A DNA stretch of 64,000 nt from Sphaerodactylus townsendi (taxonomy: Eukaryota), in contig NC_059433.1 in NCBI RefSeq assembly GCF_021028975.2, forward strand, positions 29,202,001 through 29,266,000, in the 5' to 3' direction. This document shows positions 3,416-64,000 of the stretch, one piece after another (the first letter of the stretch is position 1; every line of letters begins with the position of its first letter). Under the pieces are notes generated by a model. It ran no database searches. It worked only from the letters and a program-made list of their open reading frames with translations, and had not been told where the DNA came from. The position numbers and the translations under genes were made by a program.

Positions 3416-3514
3416 TATCAACCACCTGGCCAATCATGAGCAAATATTCGATGAAGTCGAGGACACCACTGTATAGATTGTGGCTCTTTAACTGCATCTC
3501 AGTATCATCTAACA

Positions 3515-3652
3515 CATGGGTCTTCAAACTATGGCCCTCCAGACGTTCATAGACTACAATTCCCATGAGCCCTACCACCTGGCCCTGCTGACAGGGGCTG
3601 ATGGGAATTGTAGTCCATGAACATCTGGAGGGCCATAGTTTGAAGACTCCTG
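3515..3652. mobile_element. Palindromic hAT-type MITE
   Basis: Long inverted arms (tcttcaaactatggccctccaga / tctggagggccatagtttgaaga); 8-bp TSD ATCTAACA on both sides. Confidence 0.85.
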
Positions 3653-38278: not shown

Positions 38279-38633
38279 CTATTTTCTTGTCTCAAGTTCA
38301 TCTTCTATTTCCTGTAATTGATATTCCAGTTCACTTTCCTCCAGTTCACTTTCACTGTCCCAATAATCTTCATTATATTTGTCCGCTAAATATTTCGAAG
38401 GTGTGAGATCATCAGAAGCTTTCCTGGCTTTTTTCTTTCTCAGTTTCTTTTGCTTCTGTATTTCAGCCAGCTGCTCCTGCTGCTGCTGTAACAATCCAAT
38501 CCCTTCTACTACTTCGTCCTTTCTCATGTTTTTGTATTCAAGTATTTGCTTATTTAAATCTTCATGATCAACTCCAAACAGATTAGAGAGAATGGGAGAA
38601 TCTGGGGGGTCCAGAGATCCGGATCCTTGTTCG
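38279..38633 (-). CDS. RBFA: RBFA last coding exon (exon 7)
   Basis: SNLFGVDHEDLNKQILEYK matches human RBFA SSLCGIDHEALNKQIMEYK; acceptor CTTGCAG; phase 2 fits exon 6; TAG stop. Confidence 0.88.
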
Positions 38634-39565
38634 CTGCAAGAAAGGGGCAAAGTTGGATAAACTATAACATATTTGATACTCTTCAAGTAAACACAAGACC
38701 ACATATAGGCTCTCTGAAACATATCTGAACATAATGCAAAGACAGCTTCTAATATTTCAGTTTTGCCATCAAGTTTTCAACTCTTAAATAGTTATAATCA
38801 CCACTATTTAGTCCCATTAATTTCAAGGGGGTAAGAGAAAACCACAGGCTTAGATATTTCCCACTGGAATCAGCACTTAAATTTTGGCTGGAAGTGTGCT
38901 CTGACAGTAAGGCCTGACATTTCACATACACACAAACCCCCAAAATCCACAGAAAATGACCTGCACTCACCACAGTTCTGCATTATAACACTATCCCCCC
39001 CGCACCCTGGAACTCAAAACTTACGACAATATAAAGCAAAAACACTCTAATAAAAAATCAGAAGTATTTAGTTGACATTCGTATCAACAGTCCATCAGTG
39101 TATTTTTTCAGGATGTTTGGTAATGGCAGCATATGTCACAGCTAGAAATTTTATGCACTACGGATATAAATCTGTCTCCCTTTCATGCTTGCTTGCTCCC
39201 TCTTCTCATGTGCGGAGCACAACTTAAGGCTTCTTGATTTTGAAAGTCTTCATACTGGATACCTTGTTATGTCTGAATGTAGGTATCCGGATGAAATTAA
39301 ATATGTTCCTTCTCCACAAACTGGGAGTCTAAACTGGGATTAAACAGAGGTTCAGAATAAGCAAATATGAGGGAAAGAAATGCCAGTTTGTCCAGGAGCC
39401 TGCATTCAGATGTCACCACAAGCTGAGGGATAAGACTTGTAAAATAAGTCAAGTCTTCAATCTTTAAGTGGTTGGGGGATGGAAAAGGTCACATAAGTAT
39501 GACAACAAGACTTGTTCCTCATGGTCACAAATGAACTTTATTACAGGAGTTGATTGAAGCTAGGG

Positions 39566-39713
39566 CAGGGGTAGGGAACCTGCGGCTCTCCAGATGTTCA
39601 GGAACTACAATTCCCATCAGCCTCTGTCAGCATGGCCAATTGGCCATGCTGGTAGGGGCTGATGGGAATTGTAGTTCCTGAACATCTGGAGAGCCGCAGG
39701 TTCCCTACCCCTG
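39566..39713. mobile_element. Palindromic hAT MITE at the left inversion breakpoint
   Basis: Perfect arms CAGGGGTAGGGAACCTGCGGCTCTCCAGATGTTCAGGAACTACAATTCCCATCAGCC and its reverse complement; flanks AGCTAGGG and CTCTAAAC do not match each other. Confidence 0.9.
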
Positions 39714-39815
39714 CTCTAAACTATTTTTAGAAGTTATAATGTCTACAATACAAGAAGTTGGCTGTGACTGTGTACAATGTTATTGTTCCCTAAGCTGTCT
39801 TGTTTTGTTTTAAAG

Positions 39816-39992
39816 ATACATAAGCCATCCAGCTTGAACAGTATTTTAAAGACTGCTCCAACAAAAGTTAGAAAAGAAGACAGCATACGAAAAAGAACCC
39901 TGGATGTTCTGTTATATAAAAATGTGAGAGATATTCTGGCTACTTGTGAAGCTGGCGAAGAACTTTACAATCTCAACATAGAACTGTCTAAA
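39816..39992 (+). CDS. RBFA: RBFA exon 3 (in inverted block)
   Basis: 177 nt, AG/GT; IHKPSSLNSILKTAPTKVRKEDSIRKRTLDVLLYKNVRDILATCEAGEELYNLNIELSK. Confidence 0.9.
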
Positions 39993-41383
39993 GTAAGTAC
40001 AAAAGATATTGGTCCTGTAATTTTAGATAAGTTGTAACACACGGATGATTTGGAATACTTAAATCCCAGTCCTTCAGTCAGCTCTGCAGTTCAGCATGTA
40101 GGCTACCCATGACAGGCATAACATGGTATCGTTTTGTACTATTTATTTATTTTATCAGGCTTATAGGCTGCCCTTCCTTATTGGGCAGGCTCAGGGTGGC
40201 TTATAACAGCTTACATGACTCCTCCCCTGACCCGTACCTACTATTCTGGAGGCAGAATAGTATATAATACTATAAGATTCGACTACTGATATTTATTGCC
40301 TTGGAGGAGAGCAGGCTAGTCTTGGAGGAGGGGGAAAAAATCAAAACCACCTCTCTGTGGTCACCTTGCTCTTTTCCTGGGTGGCCTGTGGTAAACCAGG
40401 TTTATTTTCTGTTCTGGTTGGCTAGCTTGCTGTAGTCTTGGCAGCTGCTAGGGAGCTGGGTTGACAGTGCTGGGGATGCAGAGAAAGGCCAGGGAGTGGT
40501 GGAATAGATGGGCCCTTTATTTCCATTCCAAGCAGAAAGACCATAGGTTCAGGAGGCTGTTAGCTTACCTCTCCCCATGTCTCTCCAGTGGCAGCTTTAA
40601 GCTACAACTCTTTGCCAATCACAAGCCTTATCAGGTGGTGGCTTTATCCACTTTTCTAAAACATGGGGGAGATTTCACACTGGGGAATACTGTTCAGAAG
40701 AGCTATAGGGGCTTATGAAAGAGCCACTGAGTGAGTGTCACTGAATGAAAGATTTGCTGCTGAAGTGAATCTCTTAAATCACATGTTTAGTTTAGTTTGG
40801 TTCAGGGTTCTGTTTTCTTTGATCTGGGAACATTCTGATTTGGGGTGTGTGGAAATGTCAGAATGGCTAGGGGGACTGCGCTGTGATTATGGGGGAGTGG
40901 TTTTTAATGTAGGAAGCTTGTAACAGTTCCAGACTTCAATTTTTCTGGTTAAATTACTTTCATGTTCCTTATTGTAAATAAATTTGAGTGTACCTAGTTC
41001 CTGCTGAAATCAAGGGTACTAAAATTACACTGAAGAGAACTTGGATTCGGATTCTGTCATTGGAACTAGGCTGGGCCTAACATTTTTATGAACCGCACCT
41101 GTGTTATGGAAGCCCTCTTGAATAATATTTCTGCTTGCTCCTGTACCAGAGTTCTCCTTTAGCCTAAGCTGTTTCTCCATCACTATATGGAGAAAATTTT
41201 AAAACACACACACACCCTCTCCCCCGCACCTTTGTGATAGAATTGACTTTTTCTCCAGGTAATGGTGATGATATTCACTTGTTCAATTTCCTGTTTATAA
41301 CCGAGATTGTACTTTTGGACCTTCAAAGTAATTTCTTCACCATGTAAAATATGTATTTGTAACAGGTATTTTAAATTCCTTAG

Positions 41384-41496
41384 GGCTCTCTTGCACCGGA
41401 TTTTTCAGCATGTCGTATATATTGGAAGACTACTGGTAACATAGAACAAGATGACCATATTGATAAGATTCTGCAGCAGAGTGCTCGACGTATAAG
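41384..41496 (+). CDS. RBFA: RBFA exon 4 (in inverted block)
   Basis: 113 nt, AG/GT; GSLAPDFSACRIYWKTTGNIEQDDHIDKILQQSARRIR. Confidence 0.9.
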
Positions 41497-42238
41497 GTAC
41501 AGCCATGCTGTTACCCAAGGATGGGGAAAGTTAAGAGAGAGACTATGGGTCAGTGGCAGAGTACAGAAGACCCCAGGTTCAATTCCTAGCATCTCCAGTG
41601 TAAGCAGCAGCAGTAGTCAGGAAAAACTTTTCTCTGCCCTAGTTGCTGGAAAGGTGCTACCAATCAGAGTAGACAGTACAGGACTCATCAGACCAATTCT
41701 CCAATTCTGTATAAGGCAACTTCATAAGTTCTCTGAAGGCCATTGATATCAATTTTCTAAGATCTGAAGAACTGGAACGAATAATATATCTGCTTGCTTT
41801 TTCTCTGTGATAATTAGCATGTATTTTTGTGACAATTAGCTCTGTGATAATTAGCATGACAAGATATGCACACTTGCATAAGCAGGCCTGTTCACTGTTA
41901 TGCATCCATACAAACTCACTTTTTCATACCTCCCCCAGATAAAAAGATGACCATTGTCTTTTGCGTACCTTAACTCACATGTCTTCCCCCTTTTCTGAGT
42001 TGCTGAGGCGTGGCCCTGAGGATTGGGGCCGGGCGGAGATCAAAATTTCAATGGATCCATCTTAAACTATAAGAACCACCAATCATTGTTCAGCACTTAG
42101 ATGGATAGCATTTTGCTTCTTTTTGGAAAAAAATGAGAACTTTCTTCATCTTGTCCTTGTTGTCCGTTTGTGTCTAAACATTTCAGATGATTTAGAGATG
42201 ACAGTTTAAACACTAGATTTTTTTCTTTATTTTTGCAG

Positions 42239-42323
42239 ACACATTCTGATTAAAAATCAGGTCCTGGGAACTGTTCCTCCAATAGTATTTGTTAGAGACA
42301 AAGCAGATGCCATGGTGCAAGAG
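42239..42323 (+). CDS. RBFA: RBFA exon 5 (in inverted block)
   Basis: 85 nt, AG/GT; HILIKNQVLGTVPPIVFVRDKADAMVQE, containing the RbfA-like VPPIVFV.D motif. Confidence 0.9.
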
Positions 42324-43419
42324 GTAAGGAAGAATGCGTATAAACATTGGATTGGATCCTTTCGCTAAGTGAGGAGTTTCCAAGCGCAGCAAGATTCTTC
42401 ACTTAGCAGAACTGGATCTAATGGATTATCTGTTGGAAGTACTCGAGATGCATAGAATCATAGAGTTGGAAGAGGCCACAAAGGCCATCCAGCCCAACCC
42501 CTGCCATGCTGGAATAGACAATCGTGCTGACAGATGGCCATGCTGCCTTTGTTTAAAAACCTCCAAAGGAGGAGACTCCACCACTCTCAGAGGCAGCGCG
42601 TTCCATGATCAAACAGCCCTTACAGTCAGGAAGTACTACCTAAGTGGACCCTCTTGTACCTTGAATCCATTACTCCCATTACGTTCATAACAAAATGAAA
42701 AATACAGTATTTCTGTAACTGGTGTTTGGTAAGTTTCCAGGATGGAATCAGTGGATAGGGGATGCCTCTTTTGCTCTCTAGTTCTATCAGCAACTATTGT
42801 GTTCCGTCCTAAAAGTACCCCACCAAGGTAGGATGACCTTCAGGAATGATACCTAGTTAGGCACATGATATGCCATTAGAAGGATCACATCTTTCTCCAG
42901 ATACTTACAAAGAAGACTTTTTGCACTTGCTCAGAGTCTAGGGTGCTTGAATTCTGGCCAATCTGGTCTTTTCTGGAAAGCAGAATAGAGTTTATACTTC
43001 AAAACCTCAAAGGAGATTGAAGCCAATCTGGATCCCTGGCTGTGACACAGTTTCCCCCTTAGAAACACTGGAGAAAATACCATTGGCTGGTGATTTACTA
43101 AGATTTTCCCCCAATTAAAAGGGTATTGGTCCTCTAACCAAGTAAAGACAAATTGTAGGTACACTTTCCAAATAGTCACGCTGTTGATTTTTAATCTCCT
43201 CAGGAGGACAGTAAAGATTCCTCAGCTAACTTGTGTCATTGAGCAAGTTCCAGATCATTTGGTGTCACAGCAAATTTTTTCAGACCCACTATTGTTTGGA
43301 ATTGGTAGTTTGCATTTGAAGACACCATGCCAAAACAGACGACTGGGAGCATGAGTTTTCATGATTTCATCTAAATAGCCTTATTAGGTATCTGAAAATT
43401 TGTGTTGACTTTATTACAG

Positions 43420-43493
43420 GTTGAGAGGTTATTGGCAGTTGCAGATTTTGGGCCTGCAGAAGAAGAAAACGAATTGGATGAAAATGATTTCAG
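43420..43493 (+). CDS. RBFA: RBFA exon 6 (in inverted block)
   Basis: 74 nt, AG/GT; VERLLAVADFGPAEEENELDENDF. Confidence 0.9.
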
Positions 43494-44349
43494 GTAGATT
43501 AAAAAAAAAATGCCGATCCAGTTAAGAGTGTCTTTTTGCTGGGTGGGGGGTGTTTAAAATATTTTGAAGTGTACTTTTGAATTGCATCTTCTCCTGCTTC
43601 ATTATCTTTCAAGATTAGTCATATTTATTTTCTTGGAATCATTTGCTTTAAAGTATGCTTGCCTACTAAACCTTGTTTCATACTGTTAAACAGGTATACA
43701 GTTGCTCCTTAAAGACTAATTAAATATATTCCAGCATACGCTTCTGTGAGTTGTAGCTTGCCTCATCAGTTGCAGTGGAGTATACACCCTAGCATTATTT
43801 CATAATATAAAAGACTGATATAATTAAAGGGTCGTGTCTTGAGGGTCGTGTCTTGGCAAGAACATATTTTAGTGTTTTTGGATGTCCACTTTTCAATATT
43901 ATCTGTGCAGTCCACACTACCCCTATTCTGATGTTATGAACAAACAGACATATCAGGAGATGTAGCCTTGTTAGTCCATTGAAGCAAACATAAACTGGAG
44001 TCTTGTGGCACCTTAAGCATTAATAAGCATTTCTTCTAAGTTTAAGCAGTCTTAAATGGGGAGTCCACTTTGTCTGATTAATGCAGTGCGTCCCTGTTAA
44101 GCACTCATGTGTATGCAAAGTGATGAGAAATGTTGTAGTCAGCACAGCCATGAAGTGCAGGAAGTACATGGTGAGAGGTAATTATGCAAAATGCAAATGT
44201 CTTCAAGAAAAGACTATTCACAATGGAAGTAATTAGTGATTCCATTCAATGCAGTCCTACACAGTGTTACACCCTTGAAAGGCCAATGACCTCAATTGCT
44301 TTAGAAAGTTGAAACTCTGTTTAGGATTGCACTATCCATTTCCCTAGCT

Positions 44350-44380
44350 CAGGGGTAGGGAACCTGCGGCTCTCCAGATG
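44350..44380. mobile_element. Start of a second copy of the palindromic hAT MITE, running into the gap (right breakpoint)
   Basis: CAGGGGTAGGGAACCTGCGGCTCTCCAGATG is identical to 39566-39596; left flank CCCTAGCT. Confidence 0.85.
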
Positions 44381-44847
44381 NNNNNNNNNNNNNNNNNNNN
44401 NNNNNNNNNNNNNNNNNNNNNNNNNNNNNNNNNNNNNNNNNNNNNNNNNNNNNNNNNNNNNNNNNNNNNNNNNNNNNNNNNNNNNNNNNNNNNNNNNNNN
44501 NNNNNNNNNNNNNNNNNNNNNNNNNNNNNNNNNNNNNNNNNNNNNNNNNNNNNNNNNNNNNNNNNNNNNNNNNNNNNNNNNNNNGGGGNNNNNNNNNNNN
44601 NNNNNNNNNNNNNNNNNNNNNNNNNNNNNNNNNNNNNNNNNNNNNNNNNNNNNNNNNNNNNNNNNNNNNNNNNNNNNNNNNNNNNNNNNNNNNNNNNNNN
44701 NNNNNNNNNNNNNNNNNNNNNNNNNNNNNNNNNNNNNNNNNNNNNNNNNNNNNNNNNNNNNNNNNNNNNNNNNNNNNNNNNNNNNNNNNNNNNNNNNNNN
44801 NNNNNNNNNNNNNNNNNNNNNNNNNNNNNNNNNNNNNNNNNNNNNNN
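44381..44847. other. Assembly gap (N run)
   Basis: N characters, with 4 G at 44585-44588. Confidence 1.
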
Positions 44848-45064
44848 GGATGGGGGATGCAATGCCCTGGGTGCCAGCGCAGTGGGAGCATGGCCGGGCC
44901 ATGGAGGGGGTGCAGCGAGTGTGTTCCGGGATGTTCGGGGGCATGGCGGGGGTGAGCGGCACTGTGGCAGGGACAGTTCCCTCTCACTCCACCCCTGTAT
45001 GTATGACTCTGTCTGTCTCTGTCTGTCTCTGTCTCTGTCTCTGTCTCTCTCTGTATTTATAACA

Positions 45065-45735
45065 TTTAAGAACATAAGAACATAAGAACAAGCCAGCTGC
45101 ATCAGACCAAAGTCCATCTAGTCCAGCTCTCTGCTACTCGCAGTGGCCCACCAGGTGCCTTTGGGAGCTCACCTGCAGGATGTGAAAGCAATGGCCTTCT
45201 GCGGCTGTTGCTCCTGATCACCTGGTCTGTTAAGGCATTTGCAATCTCAGATCAAGGAGGATCTAGATTGGTAGCCATAAATCGACTTCTCCTCCATAAA
45301 TCTGTCCAAGCCCCTTTTAAAGCTATCCAGGTTAGTGGCCATCACCACCTCCTGTGGCAGCATATTCCAAACACCAATCACACGTTGCATGAAGAAGTGT
45401 TTCCTTTTATTAGTCCTAATTCTTCCCCCCGGCATTTTCAATGAATGCCCCCTGGTTCTAGTATTGTGAGAAAGAGAGAAAATTTTCTCTCTGTCAACAT
45501 TTTCTACCCCATGCATAATTTTGTAGACTTCAATCATATCCCCCCTCAGCCGCCTCCTCTCCAAACTAAAGAGTCCCAAACGCAGCAGCCTCTCCTCATA
45601 GGGAAGGTGCTCCAGTCCCTCAATCATCCTTGTTGCCCTTCTCTGCATTTTTCTATCTCTTCAATATCCTTTTTGAGATGCGGTGACCAGAACTGGGCAC
45701 AGTACTTCAAGTGCGGTTGCACCAAGTGCGGTCGC
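45065..45735 (-). mobile_element. CR1 LINE 3' fragment, same subfamily as 36282-37275
   Basis: QRRATRMIEGLEHLPYEERLLRLGLFSLERRRLRGD...RTRGHSLK; aagaacat tail. Confidence 0.9.
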
Positions 45736-47056
45736 ATTTATATTACTACCTGTCACCAAGCACTTCAGGAACCGATAATATTAAAACAATTGGAAACAAA
45801 CATTTAAACAGATACACAATGCACTAAAATTAGAAGCAATCAAGAAACATATTTTGCCCTCTCAAAATAACCAATCAAGAAACATATTTTGCCCCCTCCC
45901 ATTGATCAGACCCAGGCTGTCTACCCGCTGTGCCCCCCTGCCCAGCCCAGCCTAATCTTCCCACCCTGCCCTCCCACTGAACTCCTCCCCCACTGAACTC
46001 CCCCTGCCACTCCCCCCACTGCTGGATAGCCATCCTGGACCACAAAAAAAATCACTCTGTGGGTGGAAATACAGGCAGCTCTTGCCTTTGGCAAGTGACG
46101 GAAATCCTGGTGCAGGAAGGAGAGCCTTCCGAGGGCTTCTACACTGCTTTGCTGCAATACGTATGAGGTGTCTGCGGGGAGTGTCTGCCTTGCCAACTCA
46201 GGGCCCTTTGCAGAGCATGTGTGAGATCCTCCCCACAGCAGGCATCTTGAGCTCCGCAAGGGCCACATGGAGGCCACTTCCCTGCAGTTCCAGCCTCAGC
46301 TGAAGGAAAAAAGGTTTTTTTTGCATGGCATAGTGGTAGAGAGGGAGGGATCAGGGCAGGGGCTGTGTGTGGTGCCTGGGGCTTGCCTCAGTTGCCGTTT
46401 TGTGGCAACATGCCACTGATGAATAACATTTGTTTTACGTTCCAGTCAGGGACATAGGTATAGATTTTTTATGGAGTGGGTTTGGGGGTGGGGCCACACC
46501 CCCACCCACCCCTAGGGCATGGCCATGCCTCCCCAAGCCCCGCCCCTGGCCTAGTGCTTATAAAAGCAGCTCTCCAAGGTCGGGGATGGCAGACTCCCCT
46601 GCCCTGCCCTGCCCTGCCCTGCCCTGCCCTGCCCTGCCCTGCCCCTCCCCTCTGAGCAGAGGCATAGAGGGAAAATGGAGCCCAGTGCAAAATCTGAGTT
46701 TTGCTCCCCCCCCCGGGCAGCCGCTGTGATGCTGGAATCCACCCCCAAACAGCATCACTTTCAATGGTGTTTAAACTAAAGAGCCCAAATTCTCCTTTTA
46801 AATCCACCTTAAAGGGAGAATCTGGGGTCCCAAGTTAAACAACATTGAAAGTGATGCTTTTTCGGGGTGGAATATCCCCCACCATGAAACAGCATCACTT
46901 TCAATGTGGCGTAGTGGGTAAGAGCAGGTGCATTCTAATCTGGAGGAACCGGGTTTGATTCCCTGCTCTGCCGCTTGAGCTGTGGAGGCTTATCTGGGGA
47001 ATTCAGATTAGCCTGTGCACTCCCACACACGCCAGGTGGGTGACCTTGGACTAATC

Positions 47057-47588
47057 CAGGGGTAGGGAACCTGCGGCTCGAGAGCCGCATGCGGCTCTTC
47101 TTCCCTTGCATTGTGGCTCCACGCCGGCCCCATCCTTGCCCACCCTGCAGGCAGCAGGGCGGGCGCACCAACTGCCCACGGTTGGCTGGGCTGCGCCACG
47201 GGCTTCCCCTCTTGCCTGCCCCATTGGAGCGGGGTGGGCGCTTTCCTGGCAGCTGGCGAGGCCGAGCCACCGGCTTCATCCTTGCCCGCCCTGCATGCGC
47301 TTCTCAGAATGAGTGGAGTAAAAGGTAAAAAAAACCCCTATATATTTATTTATTTGTTATATTTATATACCGCCCTCCCCGAAGACTCAGGGCCGTTTCC
47401 ATCAACAATAAAAGTTTAAAACATCGTATATATAATTTATCTAAAATACATAAAATATTAAACTATAGATATATATAGTGTTATCTTTTTTTAAAATGTC
47501 AAAAATTATTTGCGACTCCAAGTGTTTTCTTTTCCCGTGGAAAACGGGTCCAAATGGCTCTTTGAGTTTTAAAGGTTCCCTACCCCTG
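47057..47588. mobile_element. Non-autonomous hAT element with the same TIR family as the breakpoint MITEs
   Basis: CAGGGGTAGGGAACCT / AGGTTCCCTACCCCTG; flanks GACTAATC and AGTTAGAT do not form a TSD. Confidence 0.8.
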
Positions 47589-48365
47589 AGTTAGATGATA
47601 TTCAGCCTAGCTTTAAGGAACCAATCAGATGAGCTGCTATGTTTACCACAGTTGACTGAATGTATAAAGCCATTTGGTCCCCCTCCCTCTTGGTGCTCAC
47701 ACACATGCTATACTCTGTGTCTTGCTATTTCTATTGCAATAAAAATACATGGGCTTAAACGCGACCAGTACAAGGCCACTTCAGAAATGTATTATTGAGG
47801 CTATAGCTGTTTTGAATGTTTAATGCAAAAATAATAGACTAGGTCCTTGTATTTGGTACTGATACTGATGCTCTGATGGATGAAAAATTACTGCCATGAT
47901 CCTCAAGCTGTTAATTTTAACTTGGAGTACATACAATAATATTCTGAGGAGGAGGAGATTAGAATTCCCCACTGGGGAGAAAGGCATGATTACAAAGGAA
48001 GTAAATAAATACAAACAATATTTTCCATTTGTGAGCAAAAGGTTAAGACTAGATAACAAATTAGGGCTTTATTCTAGATAACAGCACTTGGAAACCCACA
48101 AGTCAGCAATAAGCAGTACAGAAACGGAGAACGTGGTCCGATGTCTCCACCTTTTGAAACCGATTTGCAATATCAAGCCAGATTATTGAATATTATAATA
48201 TTCTGCACAATGCCTACCACATACGTGTTAAGCAATCTGAGAGCGTCGTCGTGGGGGGAAAATCTTCCAGGCAGGCCAGAGTTGCGACTCTCCAGTAAAA
48301 CAACACACACACCCCTCTTCTGCAAGCCCTCCACGCTCCTTAGCGTGGGGTGAGGATGCACTTAC

Positions 48366-48613
48366 TTCTTTTTATAGAGGAACTTCCTCAGCAGATTCCT
48401 GGAGCCGCAGAGAGGGGCGGAGTAGTGCAGAGCCCGGCATCTAGAGCACCCCGGCAGGAACAGGCCTTCCTCCACGCTGCTGCAAACGCTATTCTGCCGC
48501 CGTCGCCACCCTGTAGCAGCAGCTGCCTCCGTTCCATGCGTGACCACCGCTCGGCCTCTGGCCACTGCGGCAAAGGCAGCAGCAGCTGCTACGCCTTGTC
48601 GAACGCCCCACAT
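48366..48613 (-). CDS. RBFA: RBFA exon 1 (mitochondrial presequence region)
   Basis: In a CpG island. MWGVRQG...LFLPGCSRCRALHYSAPLCGSRNLLRKFLYKK resembles human MW...[23 protein letters not shown]. Donor AA|GTAAGT, phase 2. Confidence 0.8.
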
Positions 48614-51869: not shown

Positions 51870-54800
51870 TTATCCATGCACTTCATTAGGGATTGGAAGA
51901 CCGTTCACTCCATCCAAGATGCTTTCCACCATGCTGATCATCATACAGCGGCGAGATTTCACAGTTGCACTTCCAATGTGAGGTGTTATTATGACATTCT
52001 TTAACTGTAGCAAAGGATGGTCTCTGGAGGAAACAACACCAATGTATATAACATTTTAGCGGACTCTTTCACTTTGTAAAGTCTACAAAACTTACAAAAA
52101 TGAAATGAGATTAATATAGGTTTTTATGACTGGTGGTTTCAAAGTTGTGTTAGGGACTGGGAAAAGAGTGTACAGGACTACTTTAGCCAAAGCCATTATG
52201 AACTTTATCTCCTTATGTTTGCCTCAAGATATTTTGTACCCCCACAAAATCTGAGAACTTGTTTCTGGGATCCTTTTGAAATGCCAGTGGCGAGACAGGA
52301 AGTTGTGCATTCTCCCCATGCGCTCTTCTTCACTGGCACTTCTACAAATGTCACTCTTCCAAAGAACTAATTGGGTTGTTTGTGCAGTCGGACTAGCCTT
52401 GTATGGACCAACTGCAGTAACACATACTCTGGAGAGATCGCTACTGCAATCATACTAGTAAAAAAAAACCTAAATGAGCAGTGCAGATGTGACCAATACT
52501 TATGCATGTATCACACCTATGGTCAGATCCAAGTTTTAAAATGAGTTTTGGAATACTTGTATCCCAGTGTGTGATGTGAGCGGGATGATGGAAAGTCACA
52601 TATTATTATTTATTTTATATTTATTATTTGGATTTATTAACCGCTCCACCCCCGTAGGGCTCTGCTTTTATTTCTGCCCCACTTACATTCTGACCTTGCT
52701 TAAGGAGTTCAGAGCAATGTTTGTGAGAATGGAACTACATCAGGCACCAGCAGGAAATTCCGTGCACATGCAGAAGGTACAAATAATATTCACTACTGTC
52801 AAGGAAGCAACATATGAATTGGATTTAAACATAAGTAGCCCATATGCTTACTTATTAAATCGCCATAGCCAAAATTAACTCTAGGAATGAATATACATTT
52901 TGTTGTTTTGCAGCAAATGATAAGTTAACCTACTAACCCTGACCCATAGTGTTTTATTTTTGTTAATAGCACTAGTGATGAGATGCAATTTCTTTTGGTA
53001 GGAGGGGCCTTTTTTGCCAATTTCCCCATCTACTGGAATGATTCATGTTAAGTCTCCATGATGTCTGTTAGGATCCCCCAGATTCCCTGGAGCAAAATGG
53101 GGGGCCGGGCTCAGTGAAGTGCTCTGGGAGGGGGGATGCAGGAAAGTCCTATTCCACAAGCATCACTTTGCATGCAGTACTTCAAATCCATCTGATAACA
53201 CATAATTCTAAATGAATCATATTTGGGATAGATTATACCTCAACCAGGGTAATTTGAGCCAAAAATACACATGGAAATACTGACTCTGAATGCTGGTTAA
53301 GCATTTCACGTTTGATCATTTTTACCTTGGCAGTGGTTCGGGATAGGTCACATCCAAAGCGGCAGCCTTAATAACTTTATTTTGGAGTGCTTTCACAAGG
53401 GCATCTTGATCAACCACCTGACCTAAATCAAAAGCAGAATAAGTTTGTTGAATCATAGCATTGGCCATTTCCCCACTTTTAAAATGACGTTCAACCTGTC
53501 TGGTCCAGGACCTTTTTAGCGCGAGGGTCGTGTTCCCTGGGCTTCCCGACTGCCCCGTGCCCTGCGCAGGGTCATCAACAGGCGCCATTTTGAGCAGCGC
53601 CCGAATGACCCGCACTGAGGGGGCGCAAGAGCAGCAGAGTCGGGGCGGCTGCGTTGTAGCCGCCCCTGTAGTGGGAAGTGCAGTTGGACCCCGCGCTACT
53701 TGGCGAGAGTAGCGCACAGCAAACAGTGAGTGGGGAAAGGGCCATTGACTTTAATGATTAACAGCACGTTAGATAATACAGATTTTAAAATTCCAACAGA
53801 TGAGATTTTCTCCAGCCAGAACATGAATTTAATATTTATAGCCTAATCAAGAGTGTTTTTCTGTATGACAGCTCTCTTTACAATTGCACTGTAAAAATAC
53901 CATCCTAAGAACGCTTTTCTGGGATTACGCCCCAGTGAATAGACTTGAATAGGATTCTGAATAGGCTTGCTGATGAGTACTCTCTATGGGGCAGAGGTGT
54001 TTCAGTCTTCACATTTCCAAAAACTATTTTACAGAAAAATTATTCGTTATCACCAGAAATTATTTTCAAACCTCATCACAGTTTATTTTGATTTGATTTT
54101 ATATGTCGATTTATAACCTGTCCTTACCCAGGGCTCAGGGCGGTGAACAACAATAATAACAATATAAAAACAGAATAAGCATAAAACATTGCAGCATAAA
54201 AACAACATTAAAGCATTAACAATAAATTAATAGTAGATGAAGAAAATCTCCTTATGATAAGAAACAAGACATTTTTACTATACCTCTGCAGATGTTGATA
54301 AGTATAGCAGAGGATTTCATGAGCTTTAATTCCTTTTCCCCAATCAAGCTGCGTGTTTGGGATGTGAGAGCCACACAGAGAATCACAAAGTCAGCCTGCT
54401 GGAGTAAGTCTTCCATCTGTTGACAATAAACAGCCCCAACTGCCTGTTCTTCATCCACAGCTCTGTAGGAAAACAAAATACAGCTCTAATCAGCCAATTA
54501 GTGAGTTAACTGGTGTACTGAAACGTTATTTTTTAACACAGTTATACTGAGAATCTATTTTTGAAAACATTTTGTAGTATGTCTATATAAACATGACCTG
54601 ACCTGAATATTCAACATATCCAGAAACGTTACAAGGAAGTGCCCGGATCCCAAATGTTATGCCAACTACAGATTTTAGAAATTGAAACAGACCATTGGCT
54701 CATGGAATATGGATTACATCTGAACATTCCAAAAACTGAATACCTCGAATGTGGCTCCCAAACAGATGGAACAATCAAAATCACCAGCCAGAAATTAAAC

Positions 54801-57800
54801 AAGGTCACTGAATTCAAGTGCCTTGGATCACTGGTTTCAGCTAATGGAAATACATTGACAGATGCCCGGTCACGAGTCAGTACTGTGTGGCTTAGATGGC
54901 GGCAAACCACTGGCATCTTGTGTGACAAGAAAATGCCTGAGCACCTCAAGGCCAAAATCTACAAAACAGTTGTTTGCCCAGTAGCATTGTACGGAGCTAA
55001 ATTTTTACCTACGGTTCCTATTATGGTACAGCAACAAGAAAACATGAACAAGTCCTTCATGTCATGGAAATGAGGATGCTTTGATGGATGCTAGTACCAA
55101 TTCTCCAGTACATGAGGCAGGCTTGGCTAAGGTGGTATGGCCATGTCATGCGCCGAGAGGAAATATCTGTAGCAAAGACAGTCCTGAACCTCGAACCTGG
55201 TGGATGCCACCCACGTGGCAGACCCAAAAAACGATGGATGGACACAATCAATGAAGACCTGCAGGCAAAGAACCTTACCCCAGAAGAAACTCAAAATCGT
55301 GACCTTTGGAAGAGACAGTTACAAAACTGACCCTGTAAATGCAGGAAACCAGTTTGGAAAGAAGAAGAAACAGACCATTGGTTCACTGTGGAGGTTAAAA
55401 CAGTGCAAACGAAATGTGGAACGAGAATATTCTTTGCGTTATGTTGCTCTCACTGCATTATTTTCTACTTATACAATGCTATTTTCTGCATTGTGTAAAC
55501 ATATCATGTCTAACATGTATCCTTTGTTTCAAATTTCTGTAATCCCAGTCCCATTATCTTGCTTATTAGATATCTCACTCTACTGGTTACACTGTGTAAT
55601 CTCCCTTGAGCCTCAGTGAGAAAGGCAGACTGTAACTGATGCAAATAAATAACTTAAATATAGATTTGAAGCATACATTCCAGGCAGGAAAAATAATTCC
55701 ATCATAATGCAACTATGTTAATCTGGATGCTACATATATGAGCAGTTATTGAGGCTAACGCAGGAGTATAAGCTGCGAGTACAAACTGGTTTTGCAATTA
55801 CAATCTGATCAGATAAATTTTTACCTACGGTTCCTATTATGGTACAGAATTTTCATTTCAAAAGCTTTGGCTCTCTGGGCTACCTTATACCCAATATGTC
55901 CCATTCCAATGATACCCAGAGTTGCACCACTGACGTCCTCTCCCAACCAGTCAGCTTTAAAATATTTGGTCTCAGGAGAAACTGCAATCTGATAACCTGG
56001 AAAATAAAGTATACAAAAGTGAGAAACAGTTAGTGGTGTTTTCAGAGATCAGCTGATGTTCCAAAGGTCTATTCTGCCACCCACACCCCTAAGAAAATCA
56101 GTGTGTGTGGGGGTGGGTGGGGAGGGGGAAGAATTGCTTTGTTTTTAATGGTAGTGATCAGCATTCCTATCCATGGCTGAATTTCTATCCATGGCTGATT
56201 CCATCCATGGCTGAATTTCTAAAATCAAGGTGCAATGGCCCAAATCTGCCTAGAAGGCACATGTTCCCAGATTCAAAGGCAGCATAGCGTGGTGGCTAAG
56301 AGCAGTGGACTCTAATCTGGAGAACCGGCTTTGATTCGCAAGTCCTCCACGAGTGGCGGATTCTTATCTGGTGATTTGTTTTACCGCTTCTATACATGAA
56401 ACCTGCTGGGAGACTTTGGGCTAGTCACAGTTCTTTGCAACTCTCTCAGGCCCACCTACTTCGTGAGGTGTCTGTTGTGGGGAGAGGAAGGGAAAGGAGT
56501 TTGTAAGCTTCCTTGGGTCTTTTTACAGGAGGAAAAGGCGGGGTATATATCCAAACTCTTCTTCTTTCTCTTATCCTCAAGATATGTGGAGACTTTCTGC
56601 AGTTACTCAGTGATCAAGGAAAGATACTCAGCAGGTACTCAAAGGCACTCTGTTACTTCACCTGTTCCAGAGCTAGAGAATAGCACTAAACAATATCAAA
56701 GGCTGTGTCCTGGCTCAAATTAGACCATGATAGAATACATTCTAAATACATCTGGCATTTCCTGTCAGCAGTTTGTGTGTTTATGTTGAGACAGCTCTCC
56801 CGCACCCACCCCCATCCCATCATCATTTTTTTAGGATGGAAACAATTGTGAGGACTGCATTTTATTGCGTATGTGAAATGCTGTTAAGTCACAGCTAACT
56901 TAGAGTAACCCAGCAGGGTTTTCAACACAAGAAACTAACACAGAACTATCAATCAGTAAATTCCACAAAATCTTATGATCTGAGACTCCAGTTTAAAGGC
57001 AGATAATCACATTGTTTCACTGCTCCTGTAATTAAAAACTCTGTGCATTAAGAAAACACACATTAAGCTAGATCTTTTCCCTCTGCTATGGTATCTTTAT
57101 ATATGCACAGAGGCTTTAAAAAACATAGGAAAGCAAAGATGCATTTATTTCTCTGTAGTCTGAAACAGTACAGACAGTGAATGGCTGCCTTGTGATCCCC
57201 CCCCCCCCCCCGAATACAGAGGCTATCTTTACACCTTGTTCCAAAGTATAGTAAGTTAAGGATATACCAGTTTCTGTGCTCTGGGTTTGAGCCAATCAGG
57301 TTTTCTCCTCATGGCTATACTGAGGGGCATCGTGGGACAGGCATGGACAAAAGCCATGTGGCATGGGAGTTGTAGTAAGAAGGGAAACTAACTGAGACTG
57401 AGTGAAAAGGCTGACTGGATCCAACCTACTGTCACAGAACAGAATACTGTACTCTTGAAACTTATTAGTACTGGAATTGCATATCAGCTTGGTGGCTAGA
57501 ATTCAATATTTTGAAATCAAGGTGTTGGTCAATTTACTTCCATTAGGTGAAAGTTTTCACACCTTTCAGTCAACACCTGTGCTGATACATCTTCACTCCT
57601 ACAAACATTGGGCTATTGCAGGGGTGTCCAACTCTAGCGCTTCAGATGTTCATGGACTACAATTCCCATCAACCCCTGATGGCATGGCCAATTGGGGCTA
57701 ATGGGAATTGTAGTCCATGAACATCTGAAGGGCCAGAGTTGGACACTCCTGGGCTATTGCAACACAGTAAATGGAATCTGCGCTGTAATTGGGATAATGC

Positions 57801-58701
57801 AAGACGCAGCAAAAACAAAACACAGAAGAAATAAGGGCAGTGGTTTGATCCACCTGAAGCTTTGGGATTTGTGTGTCCATGGGCCTCTATGACTGCTTTC
57901 TTTTTCTAGGCTAGGTTATGAGGTAGTTATAGAACTTGAGGATGAGAAAGTTTCCCCCCCAAAATAGGTGTTTTTGAAGACTAGGAGATGTTGTAGACCT
58001 GATTTCAGATATTTCCTTATCTGACTGTTGTGTGATTCTTTTCTAAAACCACAGTATTACTTCAGGTATTATCCCCCTGAAGTAAACTTTCCAACCTCCC
58101 TCCTTCTGCTCAAAATGTCCCCCTCAAATACTGCTGCTGGGTGCCAGGGACTTCCATGAACAGAATAGGGGGAGAGATGTGGGGCTACAGTGAGAAGAGA
58201 GAGGTGAGAAAGCCACACTCTACTGGTAGAAATCATTTCATCTGTGGAAGCGCTGCCTTGGGCCCAAGCTGTGAAGCTATAATGTATTCCGAAAGGGAAG
58301 ATGAACTCTGTTGTACCTTCCACAAGCCTCCTGGCCGATGCCAATAGTAAAGCTATCCCAAGGTCTGCTGTAGGATTGACAACTGCAAATGGCGTGTTCG
58401 CTACCTTCACTCCGAAGCTGGAGATCAGTTTCAAATCCAAATGATCCACTCCAACACCAGAGTTTGCAATCACCTTTAAGTTAGGCAAACTCTGCAGGAG
58501 CTCCCTGGTAGCCGCTGGTTTTTTAAACCACAAATAAATTGCTTCAATTTTTTGACTGAGTTCTTGCTGGTTTTCCAGAAATTCCTGCATGGTGATAAGC
58601 TTAAGGTGTTGCTCCAGGAACTCGACATGGTCTTCATAAACTCCATCAATGCCTCCTATAGCACTGATTAGTGTATATGGACGACAATTTTGCTTTGCCA
58701 T
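51870..58701 (-). CDS. Glyoxylate/hydroxypyruvate reductase-like D-2-hydroxyacid dehydrogenase, 328 aa, 5 coding exons
   Basis: Exons 58701-58317, 55996-55825, 54462-54284, 53422-53326 and 52023-51870. All GT-AG with phases 1,2,1,2; total 987 nt. Motifs [34 protein letters not shown] and TPHIGSAT. Confidence 0.93.
53463..53743. mobile_element. PIF/Harbinger-like MITE
   Basis: TIRs GGCCATTTCCCCACT / AGTGGGGAAAGGGCC; 3-bp TSD ATT. Confidence 0.7.
54640..55370 (+). mobile_element. RTE-clade LINE 3' fragment
   Basis: [37 protein letters not shown] and [10 protein letters not shown]; (GAA)n tail. Confidence 0.85.
57619..57751. mobile_element. Palindromic hAT MITE
   Basis: CAGGGGTGTCCAACTCT / AGAGTTGGACACTCCTG; 8-bp TSD GGCTATTG. 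Confidence 0.88.
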
Positions 58702-63060: not shown

Positions 63061-63350
63061 ATCCCCTAAAGCCACTGGCGAAGCTACCAGGGGACAGGGG
63101 GGGTGCTGCACACCAGGTACATGGTTTTGAGTCACGTGGGGGGCAGAAAATTCCCCCAGACCCCTCCCCCCTTCCCCTCACTTGTGGCCTCCCACTTGGC
63201 GCCCCCCCCCCTGGGGGTGGTGGGGGGGGGGGTGGGGTGGTGGGCGGGGGTGGGGGCGGTGGGGGGGGGGGGTGGGGGGGGGGGGGGGGGGGGGGGAGGG
63301 GGGTTGGGGGGGGGGGTGGAGGGGGGGGGGGGAGTGGGGTGGGGGGGGGG

Positions 63351-63638
63351 NNNNNNNNNNNNNNNNNNNNNNNNNNNNNNNNNNNNNNNNNNNNNNNNNN
63401 NNNNNNNNNNNNNNNNNNNNNNNNNNNNNNNNNNNNNNNNNNNNNNNNNNNNNNNNNNNNNNNNNNNNNNNNNNNNNNNNNNNNNNNNNNNNNNNNNNNN
63501 NNNNNNNNNNNNNNNNNNNNNNNNNNNNNNNNNNNNNNNNNNNNNNNNNNNNNNNNNNNNNNNNNNNNNNNNNNNNNNNNNNNNNNNNNNNNNNNNNNNN
63601 NNNNNNNNNNNNNNNNNNNNNNNNNNNNNNNNNNNNNN
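63351..63638. other. Assembly gap preceded by a poly-G low-complexity tract (63213-63350)
   Basis: N run and G-rich flank. Confidence 1.
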
Positions 63639-64000
63639 GGGTGGGGGGAGCATCGTAGTGTGGCCCCTTGTGGCATCTTTCAGTCACTTTAAAATGGAAT
63701 TGTTGTCCTCGTGGTGGCCCATGAGGATACATCTTATCTATGAGTCATGCAGACTGCATGATATCAAGTTGCCCGGTGGTTTCCACCAAGCCCAGCCACA
63801 GTGTATCCTCCCTCAAAGGTCAAAACAGTCCTGGAAAGACCCCTTCCCCTCCATCTGCTTTTTACTGACCAAAGCAAAGGTCTGAATGCTGACAATCTTG
63901 TTGTGATTATCTAGGCCACCCAACTATCGCCACTGAGAAGACATTTATTTCAGAAAACTGCTGGTACTGCTTCTATCATTTGAGGAGGTTTTTAAAAATC

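What the first reader, a model, noticed from the sequence alone, without database searches (positions are those of the whole stretch)
39558..44380. RBFA exons 3-6 are inverted between two palindromic hAT MITEs, shown by swapped target-site duplications
Seen in sequence: RBFA exon 1 (48613-48366) and exon 7 (38633-38279) are on the minus strand, but exons 3-6 are on the plus strand, so the gene cannot be spliced as assembled. The block is bounded by copies of one MITE at 39566 and 44350, identical over the 31 bp visible before the gap. The first copy has mismatched flanks (AGCTAGGG left, CTCTAAAC right). The 8 bp left of the second copy (CCCTAGCT, 44342-44349) are the exact reverse complement of AGCTAGGG. 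Flipping the block restores AGCTAGGG-MITE-AGCTAGGG and the collinear exon order 1,(2),3,4,5,6,7. Established: hAT insertions make 8-bp TSDs, as the other MITEs here do. Inference: a palindromic element matches in both orientations, so this is either an assembler strand switch or a real ectopic-recombination inversion. The assembly artefact is more likely, because one end abuts a gap and all exons are intact.
Basis: partly seen in the sequence, partly recalled or inferred. Interest (0 to 1): 0.8.

Follow-up and report, generated by a model that had tools for sequence, protein, structure and literature searches.

The report
Flipped RBFA exon block, likely misassembly
Four middle exons of the mitochondrial ribosome-assembly gene RBFA lie backwards between two copies of a very abundant palindromic jumping element, and this is most likely a short-read assembly error, not a real broken gene.

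Summary
RBFA exon 1 (48613-48366) and the last exon (38633-38279) are on the minus strand. Exons 3-6 (39816-39992, 41384-41496, 42239-42323, 43420-43493) are on the plus strand and match human RBFA residues 69-216 in order. The block lies between a 148-bp palindromic hAT-type MITE (39566-39713) and a 31-nt identical MITE start (44350-44380) that runs into an N gap. The full MITE has unlike flanks, AGCTAGGG and CTCTAAAC. The 8 nt before the second copy, CCCTAGCT, are the exact reverse complement of AGCTAGGG. Flipping 39714-44349 restores one 8-bp duplication, a collinear exon order, canonical splice sites and matching codon phases. Real inversion or artefact could not be settled. Only k-mer contigs of public runs were served, and in two samples of the same species they all stop about 20 nt inside each MITE end. 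A contig of a related species runs from the CTCTAAAC side into 836 nt that lie nowhere on the laid stretch, so the assembled junction is not ancestral. Poly-G junk at the gaps points to a short-read assembly. The element has very many copies, with perfect 57-nt arms. I favour a wrongly oriented 4.6-kb piece (about 0.8) over a real recombination inversion (about 0.17).

The parts
48366..48613 (-). RBFA exon 1. ATG at 48613, GTAAGT donor after 48366, 248 nt, ends 2 nt into a codon.
   Evidence: Weak match to mouse RBFA residues 29-53 (E 0.27).
44381..44847 (.). N stretch: 204 N, a GGGG island, then 259 N. It hides the rest of the second MITE and whatever follows it. It was neither filled nor looked up.
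44350..44380 (.). Visible 31 nt of the second MITE copy (B), 100% identical to the start of MITE A.
44342..44349 (+). CCCTAGCT, the exact reverse complement of the left flank of MITE A (swapped half of a target-site duplication).
43420..43493 (+). RBFA exon 6. 74 nt, AG acceptor and GT donor, ends 2 nt into a codon. That codon is completed in frame by the first base of the last exon.
   Evidence: Matches human RBFA 194-216.
42239..42323 (+). RBFA exon 5. 85 nt, contains VPPIVFVRDK.
   Evidence: Matches human RBFA 165-190.
41384..41496 (+). RBFA exon 4. 113 nt, contains SLAPDFSACRIYWKT.
   Evidence: Matches human RBFA 128-161. Pfam RBFA PF02033 positions 37-71, E 0.023, below the cut-off as expected for a single exon.
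39816..39992 (+). RBFA exon 3. 177 nt, phase 0 to 0.
   Evidence: Matches human RBFA 69-126, E 2.5e-11.
39714..39721 (+). CTCTAAAC, right flank of MITE A. Its reverse complement GTTTAGAG is the presumed TSD of the other MITE.
   Evidence: A contig of a related species starts matching at 39712, with 836 nt of other sequence before it (X8 record 27).
39566..39713 (.). MITE A. 148-bp palindromic hAT-type MITE with CAGGGG...CCCCTG termini, perfect 57-nt arms, and a centre asymmetric at positions 58/61/62 versus 87/88/91.
   Evidence: Depth is about 1e5 times the unique depth.
39558..39565 (+). AGCTAGGG, left flank of MITE A.
38279..38633 (-). RBFA last exon. AG acceptor before 38633; stop codon at 38281-38279.
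   Evidence: Matches human RBFA 230-307, E 4.6e-8.

Best explanation
The 4.6-kb piece 39714-44349, which carries RBFA exons 3-6, was placed in the wrong orientation when a short-read assembly was built. Its two ends lie in copies of a 148-bp palindromic MITE. The outer 57 nt of that element read the same on both strands, and it is present in very many copies. Every k-mer and every short read at the four flank-to-MITE junctions therefore fits both orientations. The left junction was closed through generic MITE sequence, and the right junction stayed an N gap. In the animal the gene is probably collinear on the minus strand: exon 1, exon 2 (not visible), then exons 3-7. Each MITE would then be flanked by its own 8-bp duplication, AGCTAGGG for the left one and GTTTAGAG for the right one. 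What is shown: the anatomy, the TSD swap, intact exons with matching phases, and the break of independent contigs at the MITE. What is inferred: that the flip arose in the computer and not in the genome.
For: 1. Flipping 39714-44349 restores AGCTAGGG on both sides of the left MITE and the exon order 1,(2),3,4,5,6,7 on one strand.
2. All five visible internal splice junctions are canonical AG/GT. The phases fit across the supposed breakpoint: exon 6 ends with AG, and the C that opens the last exon continues the open frame. So there is no decay of a gene that, as assembled, could not be spliced.
3. In two samples of the same species (X1, X3), contigs stop about 20 nt inside each MITE end: 38400-39586, 39695-40384 and 42560-44368. 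Short-range data therefore cannot orient the piece.
4. MITE depth is about 3.5e6 against about 25 for unique sequence, and the arms are perfect over 57 nt.
5. The assembly looks short-read. There are N runs of odd sizes, a lone GGGG inside this gap, and about 140 nt of poly-G junk at the next gap. One end of the block abuts the gap.
6. Depth is even across the flanks and the block (22-25 in X1), so there is no extra copy.
7. In a related species (X8 record 27), the CTCTAAAC side continues into 836 nt that lie nowhere on 38400-44380. The assembled neighbour is therefore not ancestral.
8. Two housekeeping mitochondrial genes broken in the same way fits a systematic artefact better than biology.
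9. From general knowledge, not tested here: wrong orientation of contigs of a few kb is a common scaffolding error, and loss of RBFA is expected to be harmful.
Against: No read, mate pair or transcript was seen that shows the collinear orientation in this species. The left junction is continuous sequence and not a gap, so the error would have to be a contig-level or gap-closing error, not only a scaffold orientation error. The swapped-TSD pattern is exactly what a real recombination between the two copies would leave. Run X1 differs from the window at only 3 of about 5,800 bases, so it may be the assembled animal, and even so it gives no orientation information.
Confidence: 0.8

Rival explanations
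1. A real, recent inversion of 4.6 kb arose by ectopic (non-allelic homologous) recombination between oppositely oriented arms of the two palindromic MITE copies. It is carried by the sequenced animal, probably on one haplotype, and gives a null RBFA allele. This mechanism exchanges the target-site duplications exactly as seen.
For: The TSD half-swap is exact, and this is the classical signature of transposon-mediated inversions. A palindromic element offers homology in both orientations at any pair of copies. The two copies are identical over the 31 nt that can be compared, so they are young. The intact exons fit a very recent event. A relative's contig shows that the assembled junction is derived. 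The left junction is assembled without a gap.
Against: The homology is only 148 bp (57-nt perfect arms), which is short for efficient recombination. The event would destroy a conserved mitochondrial ribosome-assembly gene, yet every exon, splice site and phase is intact. One end sits at a gap in an assembly with short-read artefacts. All junction k-mers are the same in both arrangements, so the assembler had no local information. A second such case in another essential gene is reported from the same genome (unchecked).
Confidence: 0.17
2. There was no inversion at all. The reverse-complement match of the two 8-mers is chance, helped by the palindromic CTAG target preference. The plus-strand exons are a separate, duplicated or retro-copied piece of RBFA.
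For: Target preference lowers the weight of the 8-mer match to about 1e-3. CCCTAGCT occurs 3 times in the window.
Against: The exons keep their introns with canonical splice sites, so this is not a retrocopy. Depth equals the single-copy flanks, so it is not a duplicate. No other copies of exons 3-6 exist between exon 1 and the last exon on the minus strand, and the 467-nt gap is too small to hold them. The exon orientation and the 8-mer match are independent and point to the same two breakpoints.
Confidence: 0.02

Closest known systems
Inversion misassembly or wrongly oriented short contig at inverted or palindromic repeats in short-read and linked-read assemblies
   Same: The breakpoints lie exactly in a high-copy repeat longer than the k-mer. 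One side is a gap. The gene content is intact once the piece is flipped. Independent k-mer contigs break at the same places.
   Different: The left junction is closed sequence, so a gap-closing or graph-path error is needed in addition to a scaffold orientation error. No discordant read pairs could be inspected.
Natural inversions made by ectopic recombination between foldback transposon copies with exchanged target-site duplications (Galileo elements and the 2j, 2q7 and 2z3 inversions of Drosophila buzzatii; from my own knowledge, not retrieved here)
   Same: Two copies of a foldback or palindromic element sit at the breakpoints, and each copy is flanked by unlike sequences that pair up as duplications only after the segment is flipped.
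   Different: Those elements have long inverted arms (hundreds of bp to kb), and the inversions were shown in real chromosomes. Here the element is 148 bp, only one of the two TSD pairs is visible, and existence in real DNA is not shown.
hAT-superfamily non-autonomous elements (MITEs) of vertebrates with 8-bp TSDs and a central TA/CTAG target preference
   Same: The termini start with CAGGG. Two related copies in the window have 8-bp TSDs. The flanks follow nn[C/T]TAnnn. At 148 bp there is no coding capacity.
   Different: It is an almost perfect palindrome with no spacer. No autonomous partner or transposase was examined here, so assignment to the superfamily rests on the termini and the TSD length alone.
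RBFA, mitochondrial ribosome-binding factor A (human and mouse chains in the mitoribosome small-subunit assembly structures 7pnx and 7pnt)
   Same: Exons 3-7 match residues 69-307 of the human protein piece by piece and in order.
   Different: Exon 2 was not found in visible sequence. As assembled, the exons are on two strands. I did not build a joined protein.

Membership tests
hAT-type MITE | 8-bp target-site duplication | tested here: met
   Two diverged relatives with the same terminal type have perfect 8-bp TSDs: ATCTAACA at about 3509-3650 and GGCTATTG at about 57620-57750. For MITE A itself a TSD appears only after the block is flipped.
hAT-type MITE | Short terminal inverted repeats beginning with CAG/TAG (YARNG) and no coding capacity | tested here: met
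   The termini are CAGGGGTAGGGAACC... and ...GGTTCCCTACCCCTG. The element is 148 bp and palindromic throughout.
hAT-type MITE | A related autonomous element encoding a hAT transposase | not tested
   No transposase was searched for. The 532-bp element at 47057-47588 shares the termini but is also non-coding.
Transposon-mediated recombination inversion with exchanged TSDs | Both TSD pairs are exchanged between the two element copies | tested here: inconclusive
   One pair is seen: AGCTAGGG at 39558 and its reverse complement at 44342. The partner of CTCTAAAC would lie in the N stretch, which I did not fill.
Transposon-mediated recombination inversion with exchanged TSDs | The inverted arrangement exists in real DNA molecules of the organism | tested here: inconclusive
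   Only Logan contigs were served. In X1 and X3 they end about 20 nt inside each MITE end, so neither arrangement is shown.
Assembly misorientation | The breakpoints coincide with a repeat that the data type cannot span, next to a gap | tested here: met
   Contigs of two samples break at both MITE ends. A gap starts 31 nt into MITE B. There is poly-G junk at the gaps.
Assembly misorientation | Read pairs or long reads of the same individual contradict the assembled joins | not testable with these tools
RBFA (PF02033-containing mitochondrial protein) | Sequence match to RBFA along the protein, in order | tested here: met
   Exon-by-exon matches to human RBFA residues 69-126, 128-161, 165-190, 194-216 and 230-307.
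RBFA (PF02033-containing mitochondrial protein) | The Pfam RBFA domain scores above the gathering score | tested here: inconclusive
   Only single exons were scanned. Exon 4 gives 15.4 bits against a cut-off of 34.7. The joined protein was deliberately not built.

The most novel reading that the evidence does not exclude
The inversion is real. A 148-bp palindromic hAT MITE, present in very many copies in a squamate-like genome, mediates kilobase-scale inversions by recombination between neighbouring copies. Here that would have produced a very young null allele of the mitochondrial ribosome-assembly gene RBFA, and possibly a similar one in PARL. If so, this MITE family would be an active source of gene-breaking structural variation in natural populations.
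Probability: 0.15. Interest if true: 0.6.

Novelty: not a real feature. Interest (0 to 1): 0.15.

Why it matters
If it is an artefact, as I judge most likely, the practical lesson is for users of this assembly. Gene models near these palindromic MITEs can be broken by wrongly oriented pieces; RBFA is one here and PARL is reportedly another. The swapped-TSD test is a cheap, sequence-only way to find and repair such errors genome-wide. If it is real, it would be a vertebrate counterpart of the foldback-element inversions of Drosophila, made by a much shorter element. It would also show a hyper-abundant MITE family generating loss-of-function structural variants in essential genes.

Tried and rejected
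- **Public runs.** Nine holders were found, none on record as RNA, and all were served as k-mer contigs. Laying four of them gave no contig that spans a MITE in the window's species. Orientation could not be read, and no splice evidence was available.
- **Short joints.** The many short 'joints' from 39713/39718 to 44344/44349 or 42451 have sides of 19-28 nt and come from other genomic copies of the repeats. I gave them no weight.
- **The relative's contig (X8 record 27).**
  - I tried to fetch it through its exon-3 reading frame. The search for homologous proteins with window:39777-40034 found no candidate.
  - With the last-exon frame, only distant relatives appeared (at most 70% identity, including a Sphenodon entry).
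  - No close relative's locus could therefore be fetched, and the 836 nt could not be compared with the sequence beyond the gap.
- **The big representative search.** I did not use it.
- **Exon 2.** A scan of both strands of 38634-48365 for an exon of length 3n+1 with AG/GT borders gave nothing convincing. It may lie in the N stretch.
- **Partner flanks of the 47057-47588 element.** None were found in the window.
- **Paper searches.** Two searches returned nothing relevant.
- **Promoter/terminator scan.** This scan is built for bacteria and is irrelevant here.
- **Earlier notes.** Notes by place near the finding held nothing.
- **Limits I kept to.** I did not fill or look up the N stretches.
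Full report
**What is in the sequence**

A 148-bp element lies at 39566-39713. It begins CAGGGGTAGGGAACC and ends with the reverse complement of that. It is a near-perfect palindrome. The outer 57 nt of the two arms are exactly complementary, and only positions 58/61/62 versus 87/88/91 break the symmetry.

Its flanks are AGCTAGGG (39558-39565) and CTCTAAAC (39714-39721), which agree at only 3 of 8 positions. A second copy starts at 44350 and is identical over its 31 visible nt. It then runs into N 44381-44584, a lone GGGG, and N 44589-44847. The 8 nt before this second copy, CCCTAGCT (44342-44349), are the exact reverse complement of AGCTAGGG. I did not fill or look up the N stretches.

**Is the 8-bp logic sound?**

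Two diverged relatives of the element in the same window have clean 8-bp duplications. These are ATCTAACA around 3509-3650 and GGCTATTG around 57620-57750. The 8-bp rule therefore holds for this kind of element.

All flanks seen here have [C/T]TA at positions 3-5, a target preference with a palindromic flavour. The reverse-complement match is therefore worth about 1 in 600-800, not 1 in 65,536. That is my own estimate from five flanks, so it is rough.

A third element with the same termini (47057-47588, 532 bp) has unlike flanks, GACTAATC and AGTTAGAT, and no partner in the window.

**The gene**

I searched exon by exon by reference and did not build a joined protein.

| Exon | Coordinates | Strand | Match | E-value |
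|---|---|---|---|---|
| 1 | 48613-48366 | - | mouse RBFA 29-53 (weak, but the only hit) | 0.27 |
| 3 | 39816-39992 | + | human RBFA 69-126 | 2.5e-11 |
| 4 | 41384-41496 | + | human RBFA 128-161 | 4e-9 |
| 5 | 42239-42323 | + | human RBFA 165-190 | 3e-3 |
| 6 | 43420-43493 | + | human RBFA 194-216 | 0.02 |
| last | 38633-38279 | - | human RBFA 230-307 | 4.6e-8 |

- Pfam sees RBFA only in exon 4 and below its cut-off, as expected for a single exon.
- All acceptors are AG and all donors are GT.
- The exon lengths are 248 nt for exon 1, then 177, 113, 85 and 74 nt for exons 3-6. These give compatible codon phases.
- Exon 6 ends two bases into a codon, and the first base of the last exon completes it in the open frame that runs to the stop.
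- Exon 2 must be 3n+1 nt long and was not found in visible sequence.
- With 39714-44349 flipped, the exons fall in the order 1,(2),3,4,5,6,7 on the minus strand, at 44247-44071, 42679-42567, 41824-41740 and 40643-40570.

As assembled, the gene cannot be spliced. Flipped, it is intact.

**Reads**

Nine public runs hold the stretch. None is on record as RNA, and all are kept as k-mer contigs. I laid four of them on window:38400-44380.

- **Same species.** In two samples (X1 with 3 differences in about 5.8 kb, X3 with about 27), the contigs end about 20 nt inside each MITE end. In X1 they cover 38400-39586, 39695-40384 and 42560-44368. No contig crosses a MITE, so neither orientation is shown.
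- **Why they break.** All junction k-mers are shared by the two arrangements, and the element's summed depth is about 1e5 times that of unique sequence.
- **Copy number.** Depth across the flanks and the block is even (22-25), so the block is single-copy.
- **Related species.** X8 shares about a third of the sampled 31-mers. Its record 27 is 1,255 nt long. Its last 419 nt match 39712-40130, and its first 836 nt lie nowhere on 38400-44380.
  - That species therefore has no MITE at this junction, and the neighbour of the CTCTAAAC side is not the exon-7 flank.
  - This fits an ancestral collinear order with an empty site for the second MITE.

**Weighing the two causes**

Both a real recombination between the two copies and a wrongly oriented piece give exactly this anatomy.

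For the artefact:
- The assembly carries hallmarks of short reads: a GGGG island in this gap and about 140 nt of poly-G junk at the next gap.
- One end of the block is at the gap.
- The repeat is longer than any k-mer, reads the same on both strands over 57 nt, and is hyper-abundant.
- Independent contigs break exactly there.
- The gene shows no decay.
- It is a conserved mitochondrial ribosome-assembly factor.
- An earlier, unchecked note reports the same pattern splitting PARL in this genome.

For a real inversion:
- The TSD exchange is exact.
- The left junction is closed sequence.
- The copies are young.

My estimate is artefact about 0.8, real (probably heterozygous) inversion about 0.17, and chance or other about 0.02. 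These odds are inference. No read, mate pair or transcript decided the question.

**Comparison with what is known**

If real, it would be a small-scale vertebrate parallel to the foldback-element (Galileo) inversions of Drosophila buzzatii, which were recognised by the same exchanged duplications. That comparison is from my own knowledge and was not retrieved here; two paper searches gave nothing useful. The element itself behaves like a hAT-type MITE in its termini, its 8-bp TSD and its target preference. No transposase partner was examined.

**Verdict**

It is of low interest as biology. It is useful as a flag for this assembly and as a sequence-only method to detect such errors.

Noticed in passing
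window 47057-47588: A 532-bp non-coding element shares the MITE's termini (23 nt on the left, 16 nt on the right). Its 8-bp flanks, GACTAATC and AGTTAGAT, do not match (2 of 8), and no partner flank exists in the window. It may be another rearranged or chimeric copy, either real or an assembly artefact.
   Followed up: partly
window 63200-63350, 63639-63650 and 44585-44588: The gap at 63351-63638 is bordered by about 140 nt of near-pure poly-G with scattered T/A, and the RBFA gap holds a lone GGGG island. These look like poly-G read artefacts of two-colour sequencing chemistry carried into a short-read assembly.
   Followed up: partly
window 42451-42596: A second very high-copy repeat lies inside RBFA intron 5 of the block, with summed depth about 5e5 against about 25. 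In the window's species and in a relative, many contigs join a MITE end directly to the first base of this repeat (joints 39713/39718 to 42451). This suggests a preferred MITE insertion site at its edge.
   Followed up: no
window 39566-39713 (and 3509-3650): The MITE family has an intrinsic orientation marked only by a few central bases: CTGTCAGC on one arm and CTACCAGC on the other. The copy at about 3.5 kb carries them the other way round. The core ACTACAATTCCCAT occurs on both arms, and earlier notes on this genome liken it to a ZNF143/THAP11-type motif.
   Followed up: no
window 58069-58701 and 53322-53717, minus strand: Exons of a D-2-hydroxyacid dehydrogenase (GRHPR-like) gene lie upstream of RBFA. 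They are consistently oriented on the minus strand.
   Followed up: no
window 45247-45648, minus strand: A 133-aa open frame that by eye resembles the C-terminal part of a LINE (CR1-type) reverse-transcriptase protein lies in the RBFA intron between exon 1 and the gap. No search was run on it.
   Followed up: no
window 43161 and 41064: There are structural differences between samples inside the block. A second sample of the same species (X3) has a 30-nt insertion after 43161, and the related species (X8) has a 15-nt deletion at 41064.
   Followed up: no
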